The notes under the pieces were generated by a model that did no database searches, was not told the origin of the DNA, and was given only the letters and a program-made list of their open reading frames with translations. Both the position numbers and the translations under genes were made by a program. From Anolis carolinensis (Eukaryota): a stretch of DNA of 64,000 nucleotides. Shown in pieces: positions 3,902-36,010 of this stretch (positions are counted from its first letter, which is position 1; the number at the start of each line of letters is the position of its first letter). The DNA lies in the NCBI RefSeq assembly GCF_035594765.1, contig NC_085844.1, positions 195,316,107-195,380,106 on the forward strand, in the 5' to 3' direction.

Positions 3902-4245
3902 CAGCAGAGTCTCGCTTATCCAACATAAACAGGCCAGCAAAACGTTGGATAAGCAGAAATGTTGGATAATAATGAGGGATTAAGGAAAAGCCTATTAAAC
4001 GTCAAATTACATTATGATTTTACAAATTAAGTACCAAAACATCATGTTTTACAATAAATCAACAGAAAAAGCAGTTCAATACATGATAACGTTATGTAGT
4101 AATTACTGTATTTATGAATTTAACACCGAAATATTGCAATGTATTGAAAATATTGACTACAAAAACATTGACTACTAAAAGGCTTACTGTGTTGGATAAT
4201 CCAGAACATTGGATAGGCGAAGGTTGGATAAGCGAGATTCTACTG
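3902..4245 (+). mobile_element. Tc1/mariner MITE, CAGTAGAGTCTC-TIR family
   Basis: TIR ...ttatccaac; homologous to 5094-5417 and 59978-60300. Confidence 0.88.
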
Positions 4246-5093
4246 TACATGAAAATACTGTATCAGCTGGAAACAACTCAGTTCCTTGTTTACTTTTATT
4301 TTGTTTGTATAATCTTGCCAAGAAAACCCAATTATAGGTTTGCCTTAGGGACTATCTTCATGGCATCTTAAAACATTATTTTCCCTTTTGTTGTAAAGTT
4401 TAAGTGCCCAATTAAGGGCAAGATTAACTGGTCTTGTTGTATAACTTGCTGTGGTAGTTTGGGACTTTGTTCCTTTTCACAGCAGGCAATTCAAGTACCC
4501 TTTAGGTGTTTCAGATTATATGTATAATCCCTGACTATTGACTTTGCTGGATATGGATGCTGTACAACAAAACTTCTTGAGGGTGCCTAGCAAAACTGTT
4601 GTTTCACCACTTTCACGTGATGGTGTACCAGCTAACTCTGCAGCTAACTTTGTTAACCCTTGTCATTGGGTATTGAAGCAGTTGCTTAGCTCCAGGTTGA
4701 TGTGTTTCTTTTCTGAGTGAAGACCTTTTGTATTCACTTCTGAGTGAAGACCTTTTGTATTTTGCTGGGGTTGATAAATACAGTGTTGTTCCTGGGCTCC
4801 AGTTTTTCCTTTCTCTGTGCATCCAGAGTCTGAAAGAATGTATTGGGCAAACCAATTTGATTGAAATGTCGGGGAGGGGCTGAAATTGCAGAATTAGTTA
4901 CTGAGTATGAATTGTCTTACAGCTGTGTGAATTTCGATCTCTAAAATTATGTTTACCAAGAGTATGTTCCAGCAGCTAACCAGACCTCAGACCGAATTCT
5001 GCAGCAATATTCAAAATAGTTTTATGCTAAGGTATGATAGAAAATTGGTCTGTTTCCTAAATTTTCCAATGGGGGGTAAGCTTCAAATGTATA

Positions 5094-29400: not shown

Positions 29401-29699
29401 GTCATGGCATAAATGACAAAATTAAGCAAAGGTAGGGCTTGCAATATGACGGAAGATATGGACATTTGGGATAATATTGAAAGAAGTTACTTTAATCAGC
29501 TGGTATAAATCACCTCCAGAACAAGTGAAACTTCTAATATAATCATAGAATAATAGAGTTGCCTTTCATGGAACTTAAGCCATTGATTCTTAGTTCTTTA
29601 CTTGGTCTAGGAGTCTTTACTCAGTATTGGTTCTTTACTTAGTATTGGAGTCTTTCCAAATTTTCTTCATGTGAAAAATATGCATTGAAAAATTAATAT

Positions 29700-29879
29700 T
29701 TTTTCTTCGTGTACTCTGTGAATGCACACTAATGGAGAACGCTGCGCCTGCACAGGCTCCAGCGGATACTCTTCCAAGCTAAAGTTTGAAATTTGGCGGT
29801 AACCCCGCCCCTCTCCCCAGAGGGTATAAAGGGCGCCCCCCGCGCTCGCTCTCCAGTTCCTTTTTTTTCCGCCGCAAAG
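29700..29879 (+). repeat. DIRS left ITR
   Basis: Reverse complement of 35291-35463 with a few mismatches and small indels. Confidence 0.95.
29803..29859 (+). promoter_or_regulatory. Putative Pol II promoter in the left ITR (GC box, TATAAA 29825-29830, Inr CCAGTTC with A at 29855)
   Basis: TATA-to-Inr spacing is 30 nt, upstream of the gag ATG at 29903. Confidence 0.65.
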
Positions 29880-29902
29880 CTCACTTCGGACTCTTCGTTC
29901 TT

Positions 29903-31764
29903 ATGTCGACCACGCGTTTTAAGCGGTGCACTCAGTGTGCCGCTAAGATTCCAGATTCCGACGGCCACGCTAAGTGCCTTTTCTGCCTCGGCGAAAGCCA
30001 CGTCGTCGGTACCTGCCGTTTTTGCCTGGCCTTTACAGCTCAGGCCCGAAGAAATAGAGCTGCGAGACTCCGCGCAGCTCTCTACGAAAAAACTCTCGCT
30101 CCTGAGGCTTCTACTTCCACTTCGGCCTCGATGGCGTCCAGGCCTGCTCCGTCGGTATCATCCAAAACCTCGAAAACCTCGAGACCAAAACCGGCCAAAC
30201 CGCCCTGCATGGTGACTACCGCCACGGTTTCCACTCGGTCAAGCAAAATGGGCCCTTCATCGACTTCGAGTTCGGTGGCGTCGGCCATTTCCACTCGATC
30301 CCGCCTGGCTTCGCCGCCATCTTCTTCCGCCATGAAGATTGCCTTCAAGAGGGCTCAGGAGGAATCCAGACGGGCCCAATCTGACTCGGCAGCTGTGTGC
30401 CCGATCCCTCCGACGCCGGGGAAATCGCTGAGGGTCACGTTGAAGCAACCTCCAGCAAAGAAACGAATGATCCAGAGGTCGTCCTCCTCAGCGTCTTCGA
30501 AGAAGGACGTCCCCTCCTCCGTGGCCTCCTCTAGGAGATCCTCTCCTATCCAACCAGCACAACGCCTCCGCTCCTCTTCCTCTCCTCATGGTCAGTCCTC
30601 GGATGCGGACGCTCAAGCCTCCCCCGACCGGTCGGTCAGGACAGTTATTAAGGCTCCCCAGCCAGCACCATCTCGTCTTCCGGCTCGACAAGAACTTTTC
30701 CCCCCGGCTCAAACACCCGAGAGGGGTAGACAAATGACGCGCTTAGCCCGTGCCGCCCAGGCTTCCGCGTCCAAGGGCGTTCGTCCACAGCCGGCTCCCG
30801 CTGCCCTTGAGGTGATACCTTATCAGGACTCTGCGCTTGTGTCTCCTCCCCGGTCCCCTCAAGGGGCCGAGGAGGATGACCCCGATATCGAACACCCCGA
30901 GTCGATCCTCTCCGCCAGCCACCTTGCTGCCTTTTCTTCCATACCTCCTGGACGTAATCCAGGCATCTTGGAAGACTCCATCTTCGATACCTCCAACCTC
31001 TAAGAAAATAGAGGCCTGGTACCGAACCGATGACGAAGCCTTGGAATGGCTCAAGCATCACCCTGACCCAAACTGATTGGGTGGTAAAGGCCTCCCAATC
31101 GTCAGGTTGACAATCCAACTCCCCTGCCGACAGGGAAGGTAAACGATTCGACGCGGTAGGCCGCAAGCTGTACTCCGGCGCTCTCCTCCTTTGCCGCATG
31201 GCGAACTACGGGGCCTGCATGGGCGCTTACCAACAGATCCTCTGGGAAAAAGCCCAACCTTTCTTCGCCAAAATTTCTGACGAAGACCGGTCAGTCCTTT
31301 CGACCCTCCAACAAGAGGCGGACTCCCTCACACACCACCAAATTCAAATGGCTAAACATACCGGCGATACCGCCGGGAAAATGATTGCCCACGCAGTTGC
31401 GATCGGACGGCATGCATGGCTTCGGTCCTCAGGACTCTCTTCCTCCTCTCGACAAGTGATCGAAGACCTTCCTTTCGACACCCAGGGCCTTTTCAATTCT
31501 GGTACTGACGACAAACTGAAGTCCAATCACGACTTCAAGATTCTCGCAACAAAGTGCGGGACCGATCAACCTCAGGCCCAGCGGACCCGATGGTTCCCGC
31601 AACGGTACCGTCGCTACCCTCAGCCTTTTCGTCACCAGCCGTTTCGACGCTCGTCGAGCTCGAGTCACCACAGTCATCAGCAACAACCTCGCCACCAGCA
31701 CCAGGTTCCGAAAGGTCGGGGCAAGGGTGCTGCAGCTATGCCACAACCCCAACGACGGGCCTGA
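29903..31764 (+). pseudogene. DIRS ORF1 (gag-like; Cys/His-rich N-terminus, LAP2alpha-like C-terminal region), disrupted
   Basis: ATG at 29903 (MSTTRFKRCTQC...HAKCLFCLGESH...CRFC). Homology continues across three frames: a shift near 30880-30920, TGA at 31074, a +1 G near 31080 and TGA at 31108. It then reads ...PADREGKRFDAVGRKLY...RHAWLRSS...IEDLPFD to the TGA at 31762-31764. Confidence 0.85.
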
Positions 31765-31813
31765 CGCCCACTCTCTCGGGGACTTTTCTACCTTCACTAC
31801 TACTGCCACTGCC

Positions 31814-33721
31814 ATGCCGTTCCTAGGCCCCGACCAGATCCTTCCTCTCTGCTCTTTCCTCGATCGCCTAGCTCCTTTCTACCACGAATGGGAGTCTATA
31901 ACCTCAGATGCCTGGGTTCTTCGCATTGTCAGAGACGGCTATGCCTTGGAATTCGAAACTTTGCCCCCCACGGGTCACATCCTCCACACCGACCCTTCAC
32001 CGGAAATATGTTCCGAGGTCGACTCCCTTCTGGCGAAGGGCGCAATCCAGCCTTCTCCTTCCGAGCAGGACACTCGAGGTTTCTTCTCGAGATACTTTAC
32101 GGTTCCCAAACGGGGCGGAGGTCTTCGGCTTATCCTCGACCTGCGAGCCCTAAACCTCTTCATTCTGCCTTCAAAATTTCGAATGGTCTCGGTGGCCTCC
32201 ATTCTCCCGATGCTCCGACACGGAGACTACTTTGCCTCTATAGACTTGCGCGATGCGTATTTCCACATCTCAGTACGTCGATCTCACAGATGCTTCCTTT
32301 CCTTCAAACTCCTGGGACAGTCTTACCAGTTCACAGTTCTCCCTTTTGGCCTCGTCACGGCCCCAAGGGTCTTTACGAAGGTGGTCGCCGTGGTGGCAGC
32401 GCACCTAAGAAAACAGGGCATAATGGTCTTTCCTTATCTGGACGATTGGATGATTGTCGCGTCCGACCCCTCATCCCTTCAAAACCACGTCTCTCAAGCT
32501 CTTTCTCTTCTACAACGGCTGGGCCTTCAGTTGAATGTCTCAAAGTCCCAACTCCTCCCGGCCACAGAGATCCGCTTCATCGGAGCTCTCTTCAACTCCA
32601 TCGCGGAAACCGCCTCCCTACCGAAGGACAGGTTCCTAGCCCTTCAACAACATCTCTCTCTTCTCCTCCGCAACCGCAGGATCCGAGCCCACTCTGTCCA
32701 GGTTCTTCTGGGTCACATGGCCTCCATGGTCATGGTTACTCCTTTCGCCAGACTACGTCTCAGACCTCTCCAAAGATGGTTTATAGACTCTTTCAAACCC
32801 CATCGGCATCCGAGCTCAATGTTTCTCACGGTACCGAACCAGGTTCGCCTCTCCCTTCGTTGGTGGCAGGACCCAGCGAACGTTTGTGTGGGACTTCCCT
32901 TCCATCCCTCCCTCCCGTCAGTCACGATCACGACCGACGCCTCCAATTTTGCGTGGGGAGCCCACATGTCAAACCTCACCGTCAGGGACCTTTGGTCCAC
33001 CCAAGAAAAGTCTCACCACATAAACTTTCTAGAACTGTTATCAATCTTCAAAGCCCTCCGGGCGTTTGCTCGCTTTCTTCCCCACAAGACTGTTCTGATC
33101 CAAACGGACAACGTAGTAGCTATGTACTACATCAACAAACAAGGGGGTACGGGCTCGAGAAAACTGATGGCTCTCTCGATGGACATTTGGCTATGGTGCA
33201 TAGCGAGACACATAACCCTGTCGGCAGTTCACCTTCCGGGGGCTCAAAACACGCTAGCAGACTCTTTAAGCAGAATAACAACCTCCCCCCACGAGTGGCG
33301 TCTCGATCCCGAAATCCTGAAATCCGTCTTCGACGATTGGGGCTGGCCAGCTCTGGACCTTTTTGCCTCCCCCTCGAACGCTCAACTTCCTCGCTTCAGA
33401 GCGAGACTACCTCCAAAATCGACTCCGGGCTGTCTCGGAGACGCGTTTCTCCTCGACTGGACTCTCGAACCCGTCTATCTTTTTCCTCCCTTCCCTCTCA
33501 TCTCGAGGGTAATAGAGAGACTCTATCTAACGCCGACATCGGCCATCCTGATCGCCCCTGCATGGCCACGCCAGCCGTGGTACCCAACTCTACTCCGGAT
33601 GTGTGCGGATCCTCCCCGCACTCTCCCAACTCTTCCTCATCTACTATCTTCACAGAAGGGACAGGTCCTCCACCCCGACGTCCCGTCCCTACACCTGACT
33701 GCCTGGAGGATACTTCCTTAA
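31814..33721 (+). CDS. DIRS ORF2: reverse transcriptase, RNase H and adenine-methyltransferase-like domain (frame open from 31520; first ATG 31814)
   Basis: RT motifs IDLRDAYFHI, LPFGL..APRVFTK, YLDD. RNase H motifs TTDAS, HINFLEL, TDN, NTLADSLSR. MT-like motifs LDLFAS, DAF..DW, YLFPPFPLI, LIAPAWPRQPWY. Confidence 0.95.
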   Translation: MPFLGPDQILPLCSFLDRLAPFYHEWESITSDAWVLRIVRDGYALEFETLPPTGHILHTDPSPEICSEVDSLLAKGAIQPSPSEQDTRGFFSRYFTVPKRGGGLRLILDLRALNLFILPSKFRMVSVASILPMLRHGDYFASIDLRDAYFHISVRRSHRCFLSFKLLGQSYQFTVLPFGLVTAPRVFTKVVAVVAAHLRKQGIMVFPYLDDWMIVASDPSSLQNHVSQALSLLQRLGLQLNVSKSQLLPATEIRFIGALFNSIAETASLPKDRFLALQQHLSLLLRNRRIRAHSVQVLLGHMASMVMVTPFARLRLRPLQRWFIDSFKPHRHPSSMFLTVPNQVRLSLRWWQDPANVCVGLPFHPSLPSVTITTDASNFAWGAHMSNLTVRDLWSTQEKSHHINFLELLSIFKALRAFARFLPHKTVLIQTDNVVAMYYINKQGGTGSRKLMALSMDIWLWCIARHITLSAVHLPGAQNTLADSLSRITTSPHEWRLDPEILKSVFDDWGWPALDLFASPSNAQLPRFRARLPPKSTPGCLGDAFLLDWTLEPVYLFPPFPLISRVIERLYLTPTSAILIAPAWPRQPWYPTLLRMCADPPRTLPTLPHLLSSQKGQVLHPDVPSLHLTAWRILP

Positions 33722-34740
33722 ATTCTCTCCACCCAGACCTGCAGGCGATCCTTCGTGCCGCCCATAAGCCGGCCACGTCGAAGGCCTATGCTTACAAGCT
33801 TGCAAAATTCCAAACTTTCCTTCGGGACCGACACGTCGATCCCGCCTCTACTTCGATCCCGCTGGTCCTGGACTTCCTACTTTCTCTTGCGGATCGTCAA
33901 CTCTCTTTGGCCTCGATAAAATCCTATCTCGCTGCTCTCTCCTGGCATTTCCAACGTCAGGGACAACCCTCTCTCTTTTCTAACAACCTCATTAAGACCT
34001 TTCTTCGAGGTTACAACAACTTGCACCCTCCAGTTCAACCTCCGACTCCCGGATGGAGCCTCGAACTCGTCCTTTCTCAACTAGCTTCAGCTCCCTTTGA
34101 ACCTATGGCCTCTGCAGACCTTCACCTTCTCTCTTGGAAGACTGCCTTCCTAATCACTATCACCTCTGCGCGCAGGCCTTCGGAACTGGCTGCTCTCCGG
34201 GTGGACGAACCCTATCTCCGTTTCCACCACGACAGGGCTGTTCTTCGCCCGGACATCACCTTCCTACCTAAGGTGGTCTCGGCTTTTCACCTTAACCTGG
34301 ATATAATACTCCCTGCTTTTTTTCCTAATCCTTCTTCTTCTTTGGAGCGGAGACTCCATCTCCTGGATGTCAGGAGAGCCCTCCTTTTCTACAAGGACAG
34401 GACTAAGGACATACGTAAGTCACCTAGACTGTTTGTGGCTTATGCTACCCATAAGCTGGGCGAACCACTTTCTTCTCAAAGACTCTCACACTGGATTGCT
34501 CAGACTATCGAACTCGCTTACCAGCTGGCTAAACGCCAACCCCCCTCTTCGATCCGCCCTAGATCAACGAGGGGCCTTTCCACTTCTACTGCCTTCCTGA
34601 GGGGCGTCCCTCTCGACTCCATCTGTCGAGCGGCTATCTGGTCCACTCCATCCACCTTTGTTTCACACTACAGGATGGACTCAAAGAACCTCAAGGACTC
34701 GGCCTTTGCCAGGTCTATCCTTTCCTCCTGCCTTGCCTAA
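31888..34740 (+). CDS. DIRS ORF3: tyrosine recombinase (domain about 33720-34740) with a long N-terminal extension overlapping ORF2; true start uncertain
   Basis: 950-codon ORF. Motifs SARRPSEL, LPKV, LDVRRAL..Y, RSTR and W...STFVSHY are typical of DIRS YR. Confidence 0.92.
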   Translation: MGVYNLRCLGSSHCQRRLCLGIRNFAPHGSHPPHRPFTGNMFRGRLPSGEGRNPAFSFRAGHSRFLLEILYGSQTGRRSSAYPRPASPKPLHSAFKISNGLGGLHSPDAPTRRLLCLYRLARCVFPHLSTSISQMLPFLQTPGTVLPVHSSPFWPRHGPKGLYEGGRRGGSAPKKTGHNGLSLSGRLDDCRVRPLIPSKPRLSSSFSSTTAGPSVECLKVPTPPGHRDPLHRSSLQLHRGNRLPTEGQVPSPSTTSLSSPPQPQDPSPLCPGSSGSHGLHGHGYSFRQTTSQTSPKMVYRLFQTPSASELNVSHGTEPGSPLPSLVAGPSERLCGTSLPSLPPVSHDHDRRLQFCVGSPHVKPHRQGPLVHPRKVSPHKLSRTVINLQSPPGVCSLSSPQDCSDPNGQRSSYVLHQQTRGYGLEKTDGSLDGHLAMVHSETHNPVGSSPSGGSKHASRLFKQNNNLPPRVASRSRNPEIRLRRLGLASSGPFCLPLERSTSSLQSETTSKIDSGLSRRRVSPRLDSRTRLSFSSLPSHLEGNRETLSNADIGHPDRPCMATPAVVPNSTPDVCGSSPHSPNSSSSTIFTEGTGPPPRRPVPTPDCLEDTSLNSLHPDLQAILRAAHKPATSKAYAYKLAKFQTFLRDRHVDPASTSIPLVLDFLLSLADRQLSLASIKSYLAALSWHFQRQGQPSLFSNNLIKTFLRGYNNLHPPVQPPTPGWSLELVLSQLASAPFEPMASADLHLLSWKTAFLITITSARRPSELAALRVDEPYLRFHHDRAVLRPDITFLPKVVSAFHLNLDIILPAFFPNPSSSLERRLHLLDVRRALLFYKDRTKDIRKSPRLFVAYATHKLGEPLSSQRLSHWIAQTIELAYQLAKRQPPSSIRPRSTRGLSTSTAFLRGVPLDSICRAAIWSTPSTFVSHYRMDSKNLKDSAFARSILSSCLA

Positions 34741-35147
34741 CTTTGTTTGCCCTACTCAAAACCAGTTTTTTTTGGTTATCCTTCTTACAAGCTGACCGTT
34801 GTCATTCAGCTTTTATGTACATGATATGTTCATGGGTTCATTAACGTAGTGCTTGTGTACTATACTTACTCACTGCACTGAAATGTATTTCATGAATACC
34901 TCTACCTCTGTTTTCAGGAAATGGGTCTATACTTACCTCTGTATTTTCTTACAGACTATCGCTCACATACAATGTTGTGATTGCGTTCTGGGTCCTAATA
35001 ACAAGGATCGGTTTTTTTTGCACTATATGCTGTTGCATCGTTTTCTTTGTTGCTTTTTTTGCACCTTGTGCTCAATAAATGTGTTGTTTGGACACTAGAC
35101 TGGTTATCGGGTTTGCTATCCCACCTACCTACACCTCAGCTTGCTAG

Positions 35148-35242
35148 TCTCCATTAGTGTTCATTCACAGAGTACACGAAGAAAAAGGACAGGTTGCTTA
35201 CCTGTAACAGTGTTTCTTCGAGTGTACTCTGTGAATTCACAC
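35148..35242. repeat. DIRS internal complementary region (ICR)
   Basis: 35148-35186 is the reverse complement of the left terminus (1 mismatch). 35187-35242 is the reverse complement of the right terminus (1 mismatch). Together they give the circle junction ...aacctgtcc-ttttt-cttcgtg... Confidence 0.95.
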
Positions 35243-35290
35243 AATCCCGCCCTTCCTTCCCCACATGCAAACCTCTCCCTTTCTTGCTGC

Positions 35291-35489
35291 CTTTGCGGCG
35301 TAGGAACTGGAGAGCGGGCGCGGAGGGCCCCCTTTATACCCTCTGGGGAGAGGGGCGGGGTTACCGCCAAATTTCAAACTTTAGCTTGGAAGAGTATCCG
35401 TTGGAGCCTGCGCAGGCGCAGCGTTCTCCATTAGTGTGAATTCACAGAGTACACTCGAAGAAACACGGTTACAGGTAAGCAACCTGTCC
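35291..35489 (-). repeat. DIRS right ITR (35291-35463) plus right extension (35464-35489)
   Basis: Inverted copy of the left ITR followed by cacggttacaggtaagcaacctgtcc, which is absent at the left end but complementary to the ICR. Confidence 0.95.
35304..35360 (-). promoter_or_regulatory. Mirror-image (antisense) promoter in the right ITR
   Basis: TATAAA on the - strand at 35338-35333, Inr A at 35308, GC box retained. Confidence 0.55.
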
Positions 35490-36010
35490 ATCTTTATTTT
35501 CAATTTACATATTCATAAAAAGTGAAAAAAATCTATATACATATTCATAAAAACAGTGAAACAATATGCATGAACCAATACAATACTTCCTAACATCTAT
35601 TATTTGGTTACGCTCAGCCGTCCTCCCCCCCTCCCAATTTAGTGACTTCCGTTCCCTTGGGTTAGAGTCATTCATATATAATTCCATTCTTCTTTCCTCT
35701 TACATTGTTTTTCTATTCTTCCTTCTAGCCTGATATTTGTTTTTTATAAATTCCCAACACAGATTCTAACAGGTTAAATTATGAAGATTTTATGAAAACG
35801 TTTCCTTCTTTCTTTTTTTTTACATAGTTTAGAAATAATTCCCATTCCTTGATAACGTTTTTTGGTGCTTTTCTTTGTTCATTATTGCTAAGTTGTCCAT
35901 TTCTGCTATTTTAAAGACTTTAACCATCAATTCTTCTATTGTTGGGAGGTCTGCCTTCTTCCAGAACCGTGCGTATACTATTCTTGCTACTATGTAATAC
36001 TTTATAGTTC
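35490..36010 (-). mobile_element. L1-like 3' fragment abutting the DIRS right end
   Basis: Minus strand reads IVARIVYARFWKKADLPTIEELMVKVFKIAEMD, then a 3'UTR with AATAAA next to the DIRS junction. Confidence 0.65.

What the first reader, a model, noticed from the sequence alone, without database searches (positions are those of the whole stretch)
31762..34740. DIRS gag and tyrosine recombinase share one frame, separated by a single TGA: candidate Gag-YR readthrough polyprotein spanning the RT gene
Seen: the gag C-terminal frame ends at CGG GCC TGA (31762-31764). The next 41 codons (31765-31887) contain no stop and run into the 950-codon YR ORF. So one UGA followed by C is the only barrier, and about 650 stop-free codons overlap the RT/RH/MT ORF before the YR domain starts near 33720. 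A stop in this frame would appear whenever a T-ending RT codon precedes GAN, AAN or AGN, so 650 open codons implies selection. Known: long RT/YR overlaps are a DIRS1 hallmark, and UGA-C is the leakiest stop context. Inference: YR is made by readthrough as Gag-linker-YR, which would tether it to particles and explain the overlap. I cannot verify whether this has already been reported for DIRS.
Basis: partly seen in the sequence, partly recalled or inferred. Interest (0 to 1): 0.85.

Follow-up and report, generated by a model that had tools for sequence, protein, structure and literature searches.

The report
DIRS gag–recombinase frame, one leaky stop
In this lizard DIRS1-type retrotransposon and 17 of 20 other informative elements examined, the gag gene and the tyrosine-recombinase gene form one reading frame broken by a single leaky-type stop and kept open across the whole reverse-transcriptase gene, which points to an untested way of making the recombinase as a Gag fusion.

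Summary
Frame 1 has a single stop (TGA 31762, then C) between the gag C-terminus and the recombinase (YR) stop at 34738. About 651 codons of that frame overlap the RT ORF without a stop; synonymous shuffles expect about 21-26.

The layout recurs. In 18 of 21 informative DIRS1-like elements (squamates, a frog, unidentified hosts), gag and the long YR frame are separated by exactly one stop: TGA 15 times (followed by C 11 times), TAG-G 3 times, TAA never. In nine of them the first ATG lies 107 to 621 codons downstream, and no Met is conserved before the YR domain.

The overlapped ~615 residues are predicted fully disordered and show no amino-acid-level constraint, so they look like a translated conduit.

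Three exceptions solve the same problem differently. One has a canonical A_AAA_AAC slippery site. Two have annotated GT..AG introns, and there the frame opens only at the acceptor.

Best reading (about 0.55): intact elements make Gag-linker-YR by stop-codon readthrough. This is not shown experimentally, and splicing is not excluded.

This window's copy has a gag broken in at least two places.

The long overlap is already published; I found no paper that proposes readthrough. First readers noted the same pattern at two other copies in this genome.

The parts
29700..29861 (+). left inverted terminal repeat of the DIRS1-like element
   Evidence: 153-nt arms 29709-29861 and 35302-35454 are 96% complementary; 29700-29738 pairs with 35148-35186
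29903..31003 (+). gag N-terminal segment, frame 2, out of frame with the rest of gag in this copy
   Evidence: ORF 29786-31003; 48-53% identical to the N-termini of intact gags over 29900-30106
30819..31073 (+). gag middle segment, frame 0, between two frame breaks
   Evidence: tblastn of intact gags L011 and L010; contigs of 4 runs all lack one base at 31079
31111..31761 (+). gag C-terminal segment, frame 1, the same frame as YR
   Evidence: open stretch; 32-42% identical to the C-terminal parts of intact gags
31762..31765 (+). gag stop TGA plus the following C; candidate readthrough site
   Evidence: homologous single stop in 17 other elements
31765..33720 (+). 'X': about 651 stop-free codons in the gag/YR frame laid over the RT ORF; predicted disordered linker
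   Evidence: 0 stops against 21.2 expected; pLDDT about 30 and no secondary structure for residues 1-626 of the 950-aa ORF
31520..33721 (+). RT/RNase H(/MT) ORF, frame 2 (+1 relative to gag), open 81 codons upstream of the gag stop; first ATG 31814
   Evidence: Pfam RVT_1 and RT_RNaseH
31888..31890 (+). first ATG of the X-YR frame; falls on the RT Glu-Trp codons; not conserved in relatives
33733..34740 (+). tyrosine recombinase domain (Cre-like fold) and its stop TAA 34738
   Evidence: folded from about residue 616-627; Foldseek Cre E 1.7e-10, TM 0.65-0.70; profile hit to Cre
35148..35242 (+). internal complementary region
   Evidence: 35148-35186 pairs with 29700-29738; 35182-35242 pairs with 35434-35494
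35302..35494 (+). right inverted terminal repeat

Best explanation
The locus is a DIRS1-like retrotransposon (about 29700-35494). In intact members of this type, ribosomes that translate gag mostly stop at a single leaky stop (here UGA-C). A fraction read through it (inferred). They continue in the gag frame for about 650 codons that are double-coded over the RT gene and reach the C-terminal tyrosine recombinase, giving Gag - disordered linker - YR. The overlapped frame is kept free of stops but is otherwise unconstrained, so it acts as a translated conduit rather than a folded domain. RT lies in the +1 frame and is probably entered within a conserved gag/RT overlap of about 80 codons (inferred). 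Shown here: the frame layout, the stop depletion, its recurrence in diverged elements, the lack of conserved start codons, and the predicted disorder. Inferred: that readthrough is the entry mechanism and that a fusion protein is made. The window's own copy cannot make full-length Gag, because its gag is broken upstream.
For: (1) In the window there is one stop between gag-C and the YR stop, and 0 stops against 21-26 expected over the RT ORF.
(2) The same holds in 9 elements fetched through long YR ORFs (expected 10-26, observed 0). It also holds in 8 of 9 informative loci found with the YR domain alone, a search that is not biased by ORF length.
(3) Fourfold sites of RT are as saturated between families as those of the non-overlapped YR domain. 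The open frame is therefore maintained, not merely inherited.
(4) The first ATG in the frame lies 107-621 codons after the gag stop in 9 elements. In total about 3,500 stop-free codons lie upstream of any ATG. No Met is conserved before the YR domain.
(5) Stop choice: TGA 15 (next base C 11), TAG-G 3, TAA 0. One element reads TGA CAA TTA, which matches the tobamovirus-type readthrough context (the motif is from my own knowledge).
(6) Stable hairpins start 4-13 nt after the stop in several lineages (z -3.0 to -4.8).
(7) Natural controls. Where annotated GT..AG introns join gag to YR (L010, L011), the frame is full of stops up to 34-76 nt before the acceptor and open after it. The window lacks AG at both homologous places. 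In L028 the YR frame opens 4 nt before a canonical A_AAA_AAC slippery heptamer inside gag.
Against: There is no direct evidence of readthrough, of X-frame translation or of a fusion protein. The public runs that could be laid were contigs of unknown library type and showed nothing usable about splicing. The window's junction has no stable downstream structure (z +0.6), and UGA-C alone usually gives only low readthrough (own knowledge). The gag = YR frame relation is partly a by-product: RT is fixed at +1 to gag by a conserved overlap (median 82 codons open, against 15 in the third frame) and YR is fixed at -1 to RT. The C after TGA is also the third base of an RT-frame GAC codon, in C-rich sequence. 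In the L012-L015 family YR is fused in frame to RT, yet the gag frame is still open for 762 codons, although that family is young (median 97.7% identity). In Candida Tca2 an in-frame gag-UGA-pol junction did not direct readthrough in reporters (PMC2194720). In the window, a weak donor-like GT at 31716 and a pyrimidine tract ending in AG at 31825-31826 could define a 111-nt in-frame intron over the stop; I read this and did not score it.
Confidence: 0.55

Rival explanations
1. YR is made from a spliced or subgenomic mRNA. A donor in gag, or an internal promoter, joins or starts just downstream of the gag stop, so the stop is removed rather than read through. The product may still be a Gag-linker-YR fusion.
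For: Two related squamate families carry annotated canonical GT..AG introns of 632 and 753 nt that join gag to the YR frame, and the frame opens right at the acceptor. Several fish and frog gene models also pair gag with YR in short proteins. Tca2 has a junction promoter. The window has a GT at the place homologous to the L011 donor and AG-ending pyrimidine tracts soon after the stop.
Against: The window lacks AG at both homologous acceptors. Splicing gives no reason for the stop to be TGA-C or TAG-G and never TAA. It gives no reason for hairpins just after the stop, or for the frame to be stop-free right back to the gag stop in 18 elements. In the spliced families the skipped part decays to neutral stop density (9 stops in 225 codons). 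No GT..AG joint was seen in the laid contigs, but those may be DNA.
Confidence: 0.2
2. The 950-aa ORF is translated on its own from ATG 31888, by leaky scanning past ATG 31814 or by reinitiation after gag. The long overlap exists only because the start must lie near the 5' side.
For: ATG 31888 exists 74 nt after the first RT-frame ATG. Nine of the 18 readthrough-type elements have an ATG 14-50 codons into the frame. NCBI models such as P0001 start there.
Against: Nine elements have no ATG for 107-621 codons, yet the frame is open from the gag stop. The 31888 ATG falls on the RT Glu-Trp codons; the Trp is conserved in RT. It sits behind a complete gag ORF on the full-length RNA.
Confidence: 0.1
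3. The open frame is entered from the RT frame by -1 frameshifting (giving RT-X-YR), or it serves a purpose unrelated to YR, such as a Gag-X extension with its own role.
For: The YR frame is -1 relative to RT. L028 shows that -1 slippage signals occur in this group. In L012-L015 the frame stays open although YR is fused to RT.
Against: A frameshift near the RT end would need only a short overlap, not 650 codons that start exactly at the gag stop. X shows no amino-acid-level constraint and no predicted fold. The L012-L015 family is very young.
Confidence: 0.07

Closest known systems
DIRS1-like retrotransposons with a 'long ORF overlap' (e.g. AcDIRS2 of Anolis carolinensis; Piednoel et al. 2011, PMC3266345)
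   Same: [quoted passage not shown]
   Different: That paper records the overlap as present or absent and offers no mechanism. It does not mention that the YR ORF continues the gag frame across a single stop or lacks a conserved start. No paper in the searchable library links DIRS with readthrough. The older papers of Goodwin and Poulter are not held.
Gammaretrovirus (MLV) gag-UAG-pol readthrough; alphavirus nsP3-UGA-C-nsP4 (own knowledge)
   Same: A single in-frame leaky stop between a structural or upstream protein and a downstream enzyme; UAG-G or UGA-C contexts; 3' hairpins or pseudoknots in some cases.
   Different: Here the sequence downstream of the stop is not the enzyme. It is about 650 codons of a second frame laid over another gene before the enzyme begins. 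No protease is encoded to release it. The window's junction has no predicted stimulatory structure.
Candida albicans Tca2 gag-UGA-pol (PMC2194720)
   Same: A retrotransposon with gag and the downstream ORF in frame across UGA, and a potential 3' structure.
   Different: In Tca2 the junction did not drive readthrough in reporters, and a cryptic promoter was found. It is a warning that this layout alone does not prove readthrough.
Retroviral -1 frameshift sites (A_AAA_AAC type; own knowledge)
   Same: The relative L028 has this heptamer in gag exactly where its YR frame opens.
   Different: The window's family has gag and YR in the same frame, so no frameshift is needed or possible for YR. RT would need a +1 shift.

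Membership tests
DIRS1-like retrotransposon (DIRS order) | inverted terminal repeats | tested here: met
   153-nt arms, 96% complementary, 29709-29861 / 35302-35454
DIRS1-like retrotransposon (DIRS order) | internal complementary region matching both termini | tested here: met
   35148-35186 pairs with 29700-29738; 35182-35242 pairs with 35434-35494
DIRS1-like retrotransposon (DIRS order) | RT and RNase H domains | tested here: met
   RVT_1 E 4e-24; RT_RNaseH E 1.7e-4, below Pfam's cut-off
DIRS1-like retrotransposon (DIRS order) | methyltransferase-like domain after RNase H | not tested
   no Pfam hit in the C-terminal third of the 664-aa ORF; no dedicated model was run
DIRS1-like retrotransposon (DIRS order) | tyrosine recombinase fold | tested here: met
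   AF2 pLDDT 75-93 for residues 627-930; Foldseek to Cre E 1.7e-10, TM 0.65-0.70; profile to Cre E 6e-5
DIRS1-like retrotransposon (DIRS order) | full catalytic set R-K-H-R-(H/W)-Y | tested here: inconclusive
   R763, K795, R895, W918 and Y928 are present. The His of HxxR is Arg (R892) in the window and in the other A. carolinensis copy, but His in all 14 other sequences
DIRS1-like retrotransposon (DIRS order) | gag-like first ORF (LAP2alpha-type in vertebrates) | tested here: inconclusive
   The window's pieces have no Pfam hit. They are homologous to intact gags. Gags of relatives carry LAP2alpha hits. The window's gag is split over three frames.
Programmed stop-codon readthrough | downstream coding sequence in frame, separated by a single stop | tested here: met
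Programmed stop-codon readthrough | downstream ORF has no start codon of its own | tested here: inconclusive
   The window has ATG 31888. Nine relatives have none for 107-621 codons, and no Met is conserved before the YR domain
Programmed stop-codon readthrough | leaky stop and favourable 3' context | tested here: met
   UGA-C in the window. Across the type: TGA 15 (C 11), TAG-G 3, TAA 0
Programmed stop-codon readthrough | stimulatory RNA structure shortly after the stop | tested here: not met
   Window z +0.61. Present in some relatives: L001 -3.1, L005 -3.0, L020 -4.8, L021 -3.6
Programmed stop-codon readthrough | measured readthrough product | not testable with these tools
   needs a reporter assay, ribosome profiling or mass spectrometry
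Overprinted (double-coding) gene | stop depletion in the second frame beyond synonymous-shuffle expectation | tested here: met
Overprinted (double-coding) gene | amino-acid-level constraint on the second frame (reduced synonymous change in the first) | tested here: not met
   Fourfold-site identity is 0.25-0.55 in RT and 0.30-0.45 in the non-overlapped YR domain. X is predicted disordered

The most novel reading that the evidence does not exclude
The end of gag in vertebrate DIRS1-like elements is a multi-way recoding hub on one unspliced RNA. Termination gives Gag. A +1 shift within a conserved overlap of about 80 codons gives Gag-RT/RH/MT. Readthrough of one leaky stop gives Gag joined to the recombinase through a disordered conduit of about 650 residues that is double-coded over RT. 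Lineages have swapped the signals: L028 and L010 have gag-stop-RT in frame, with a -1 slippery site or an intron leading to YR. In an element with no protease, both enzymes would thus be delivered into particles as Gag fusions.
Probability: 0.35. Interest if true: 0.85.

Novelty: new variant of a known kind. Interest (0 to 1): 0.7.

Why it matters
How DIRS elements express and package their recombinase is unknown, and the long pol/YR overlap has been recorded without an explanation. If the reading holds, it explains that overlap as a translational conduit. It would add one of the longest stretches known to be kept open only so that ribosomes can pass. It would also show one family solving the same expression problem by readthrough, by splicing, by -1 slippage and by direct fusion. 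The idea can be tested directly with a junction reporter, ribosome profiling or proteomics in species where these elements are abundant. It also bears on genome annotation, where these 950-aa 'uncharacterized proteins' and spliced gag-YR models are now filed as host genes.

Tried and rejected
(1) RNA evidence. The only runs offered were Logan contigs of unknown library type. Laid on 29650-35550, they gave short fragments, joints only in the ITR/ICR area and no GT..AG joint in gag or RT. This says nothing either way about splicing.

(2) The NCBI proteins P0009, P0010 and P0002 (1430-1527 aa, gag + X + YR) first looked like uninterrupted fusions. Their loci show that they are spliced gene models that skip the gag stop.

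(3) I took the in-frame relation as independent evidence in each lineage, then rejected that. It is largely fixed by the conserved +1 gag/RT overlap.

(4) A universal RNA structure after the stop was not found. The squamate junctions are unstructured.

(5) Amino-acid-level selection on X was not found.

(6) A scan of viral contigs for relatives found none. An alignment of whole ORFs was too diverged to search with.

(7) The papers of Goodwin and Poulter (2001) and Poulter and Butler (2015) are not held, so prior mention there cannot be excluded.

(8) Selenocysteine at UGA was considered and dropped, because three elements use TAG.
Full report
**What is at the locus.** The window holds one DIRS1-like retrotransposon, and no second copy was found.
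- The terminal inverted repeats are 29709-29861 and 35302-35454, 96% complementary. An internal complementary region at about 35148-35242 pairs with both termini.
- The G+C content rises to 0.51-0.61 inside the element, with a strong C-over-G skew.
- The 664-codon ORF 31727-33721 (frame 2) carries RVT_1 (E 4e-24) and a weak RNase H match.
- The 950-codon ORF 31888-34740 (frame 1) has only weak SAM-like integrase matches near residues 623-689.
- An AlphaFold model built on 16 homologues folds residues about 627-930 with confidence, and Foldseek places that part on Cre recombinase (E 1.7e-10, TM 0.65-0.70).

**Check of the observation.**
- Frame 1 has stops at 31108, 31762 (TGA, next base C) and then only at 34738.
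- The 41 codons 31765-31887 are open and lead into ATG 31888.
- The RT ORF ends at 33719-33721, so about 651 codons of frame 1 lie over RT.
- Permuting synonymous codons within the RT ORF gives 25.6 +/- 3.9 stops in that frame (minimum 13 of 5000). Observed: 1, the gag stop itself. Counting only codons after the gag stop, the expectation is 21.2 and the observation 0.
- Of 119 junctions where a T-ending RT codon would create a stop, one has T. T would be synonymous at 98 of them and makes up 25% of third bases elsewhere.
- The third frame has 28 stops against 22 expected, so this is not a general feature of composition.

**A correction: gag is broken in this copy.**
- Homology to intact gags from relatives runs in frame 2 (29903-30106), frame 0 (30819-31073) and frame 1 (31123-31644).
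- Every contig from four sequencing runs that covers 31079 lacks one base that the window has there.
- So only the last 217 codons of gag are in the YR frame here. This copy cannot make full-length Gag. Its RT and YR frames are intact.

**Is the layout conserved?**
- A search with the YR domain returned many ORFs of 913-974 aa with no Pfam domain in their first about 600 residues. They come from Anolis, Pogona, a tortoise, frogs, a caecilian and unidentified samples.
- I fetched DNA for nine of them.
- I then fetched 31 more loci from metagenome contigs using only the YR domain as query. That search cannot favour long ORFs.
- Twenty-one elements (the window's plus 20 relatives) show the gag end, RT and YR. 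In 18 of them the gag frame continues, across exactly one stop, into a frame that stays open for 762-1013 codons. In 17 of the 18 that frame runs on to the end of YR; in L015 it ends about 60 codons past the RT/YR junction.
- In nine of them synonymous shuffles expect 10-26 stops over RT, and none is seen.
- RT identity between these families is 42-74%. Fourfold sites in RT are about as saturated (0.25-0.55 identical) as those of the non-overlapped YR domain (0.30-0.45). The open frame is therefore actively kept, not merely inherited.
- By the same measure, the amino-acid sequence of the overlapped part is not constrained.
- The model gives residues 1-626 a pLDDT near 30 and no secondary structure at all.
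- I call this part X. It behaves as a sequence that must be translatable but need not be anything in particular.

**Where does translation of X begin?**
- Not at a conserved ATG. The prokaryote-style gene calls on several contigs had used GTG or TTG.
- The first real ATG lies 366 (L001), 621 (L004), 341 (L005), 107 (L007), 306 (L015), 493 (L020), 197 (L023), 153 (L027) and 405 (L041) codons after the gag stop.
- Over all elements about 3,500 stop-free codons lie upstream of any ATG.
- The window's ATG 31888 falls on the RT Glu-Trp codons; the Trp is conserved in RT.
- No Met is conserved in the 120 alignment columns before the YR domain, which argues against ATG 33562 as well.
- So the frame is entered at or near the gag stop.

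**The stop itself.**
- Among the 18 elements the stop is TGA 15 times (next base C 11, A 2, T 1, G 1), TAG 3 times (always followed by G) and TAA never.
- From established knowledge, UGA-C and UAG-G are the contexts of alphavirus-type and gammaretrovirus-type readthrough, and UAA is the tightest stop.
- L027 reads TGA CAA TTA, which matches the tobamovirus-type context.
- Stable hairpins begin 4-13 nt after the stop in L001, L005, L020 and L021 (z -3.0 to -4.8). Similar C-tract/G-tract stems occur in L007, L019 and L023. In these a C-rich spacer pairs with the G-run that encodes the conserved Gly-Gly-Arg-Leu motif of RT.
- The squamate junctions, including the window's, are unstructured (z +0.6).

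**The exceptions are informative.**
- L011 (Anolis sagrei) keeps gag-TGA-C in frame with YR, but has 9 further stops in the next 225 codons, close to neutral density. The frame opens at 4291.
- In L010 (Sceloporus) gag is in frame with RT across TGA-G, and the YR frame opens at 4128.
- For both, NCBI gene models (P0002, P0009) join gag to YR through introns with canonical GT..AG sites (753 and 632 nt). The acceptors lie 34 and 76 nt after the point where the frame opens.
- This is what the YR frame looks like when its 5' part is not translated. The window has no AG at either homologous acceptor.
- In L028 gag is in frame with RT across TAG-G. The YR frame, at -1, opens 4 nt upstream of an A_AAA_AAC heptamer placed in the correct gag phase. 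That is the classical retroviral slippery site.
- In L012-L015, a young family (median 97.7% identity), YR is fused in frame to RT in one 1007-aa ORF. The gag frame is still open for 762 codons and fills with stops only where YR has left it.
- The common theme is that the recombinase has no start of its own and is reached from gag. Readthrough is the simplest entry for the majority layout.

**Limits.**
- Nothing here measures translation.
- The in-frame relation is not independent evidence in each lineage. The RT frame is open for a median of 82 codons before the gag stop in 19 of 20 elements, against 15 in the third frame. This points to a constrained +1 gag/RT overlap, which, together with YR at -1 to RT, puts YR in the gag frame automatically.
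- The C after TGA is also the third base of an RT-frame GAC codon, in C-rich sequence.
- A short in-frame intron over the stop cannot be excluded for the window. There is a GT at 31716, at the place of the L011 donor, and an AG-ending pyrimidine tract at 31825-31826. I read these and did not score them.
- Tca2 of Candida shows that an in-frame gag-UGA-pol junction can fail to direct readthrough in reporters (PMC2194720).
- The public runs available were contigs of uncertain type and do not settle splicing.

**What is known already.**
- The long pol/YR overlap, and the fact that the catalytic domain lies in the non-overlapping 3' end, are published. An Anolis family, AcDIRS2, is listed as having the overlap (PMC3266345). 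Later surveys repeat this (PMC9210276, PMC6681497).
- No paper in the searchable library combines DIRS with readthrough, or says that the gag and YR frames are continuous.
- The founding papers are not held, so earlier mention there cannot be excluded.
- Two first-reader notes of this scan report the same single UGA-C pattern at other copies in this genome. They are unchecked and were not used as evidence.

**Verdict.** Splicing is the main rival. I rate it a new variant of known kinds: readthrough fusions and DIRS overlaps.

Noticed in passing
window 34561-34563 (residue 892 of the 950-aa ORF): The His of the recombinase HxxR box is Arg in the window and in the other A. carolinensis copy (P0001). 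It is His in all 14 other homologues aligned. It looks like a family-level change at a catalytic position.
   Followed up: partly
window 31079; also 30106-30819: gag is broken here. One extra base at 31079 relative to every contig of four runs shifts frame 0 to frame 1. At least one further shift (frame 2 to frame 0) lies between 30106 and 30819.
   Followed up: partly
window 31520-31762, and the same region in 19 of 20 elements: The RT frame (+1 to gag) is open for a median of 82 codons before the gag stop, against 15 in the third frame, and has no conserved ATG. This suggests RT is made as a Gag fusion by a +1 shift. I did not identify a shift site.
   Followed up: partly
L028:2164-2272: A variant element. 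Gag is in frame with RT across TAG-G. The YR frame opens at 2167, and a canonical A_AAA_AAC slippery heptamer sits at 2170-2176 in gag phase.
   Followed up: partly
L010:3569-4200 and L011:3569-4321: The annotated introns with canonical GT..AG sites join gag to the YR frame in Sceloporus and Anolis sagrei elements. The YR frame opens 34-76 nt before each acceptor.
   Followed up: partly
L012-L015:3665-7022: A young family in an unidentified genome in which RT/RH/MT and YR are fused in one 1007-aa ORF. The gag frame is still open for 762 codons after a single TGA-C.
   Followed up: partly
L001, L007, L019, L021, L023 (first about 80 nt after the gag stop): There is a recurrent hairpin in which a C-rich spacer pairs with the G-run that encodes the conserved Gly-Gly-Arg-Leu of RT. 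L021 and L023 share the outer stem, with different inner pairs.
   Followed up: no
window 35487 joined back to 29716 (contigs of runs X1 and X4): Contigs join the right end to the left end with the same 17 extra letters between. These could be tandem copies or circular forms. The library type is unknown.
   Followed up: no
proteins (e.g. P0003, P0028, P0093): Host-gene names such as inositol hexakisphosphate kinase 3, CTP synthase 1-B and Sec1 family domain containing 1 are attached to models that contain DIRS YR sequence. These are likely annotation chimeras.
   Followed up: no
I did not examine it.
   Followed up: no
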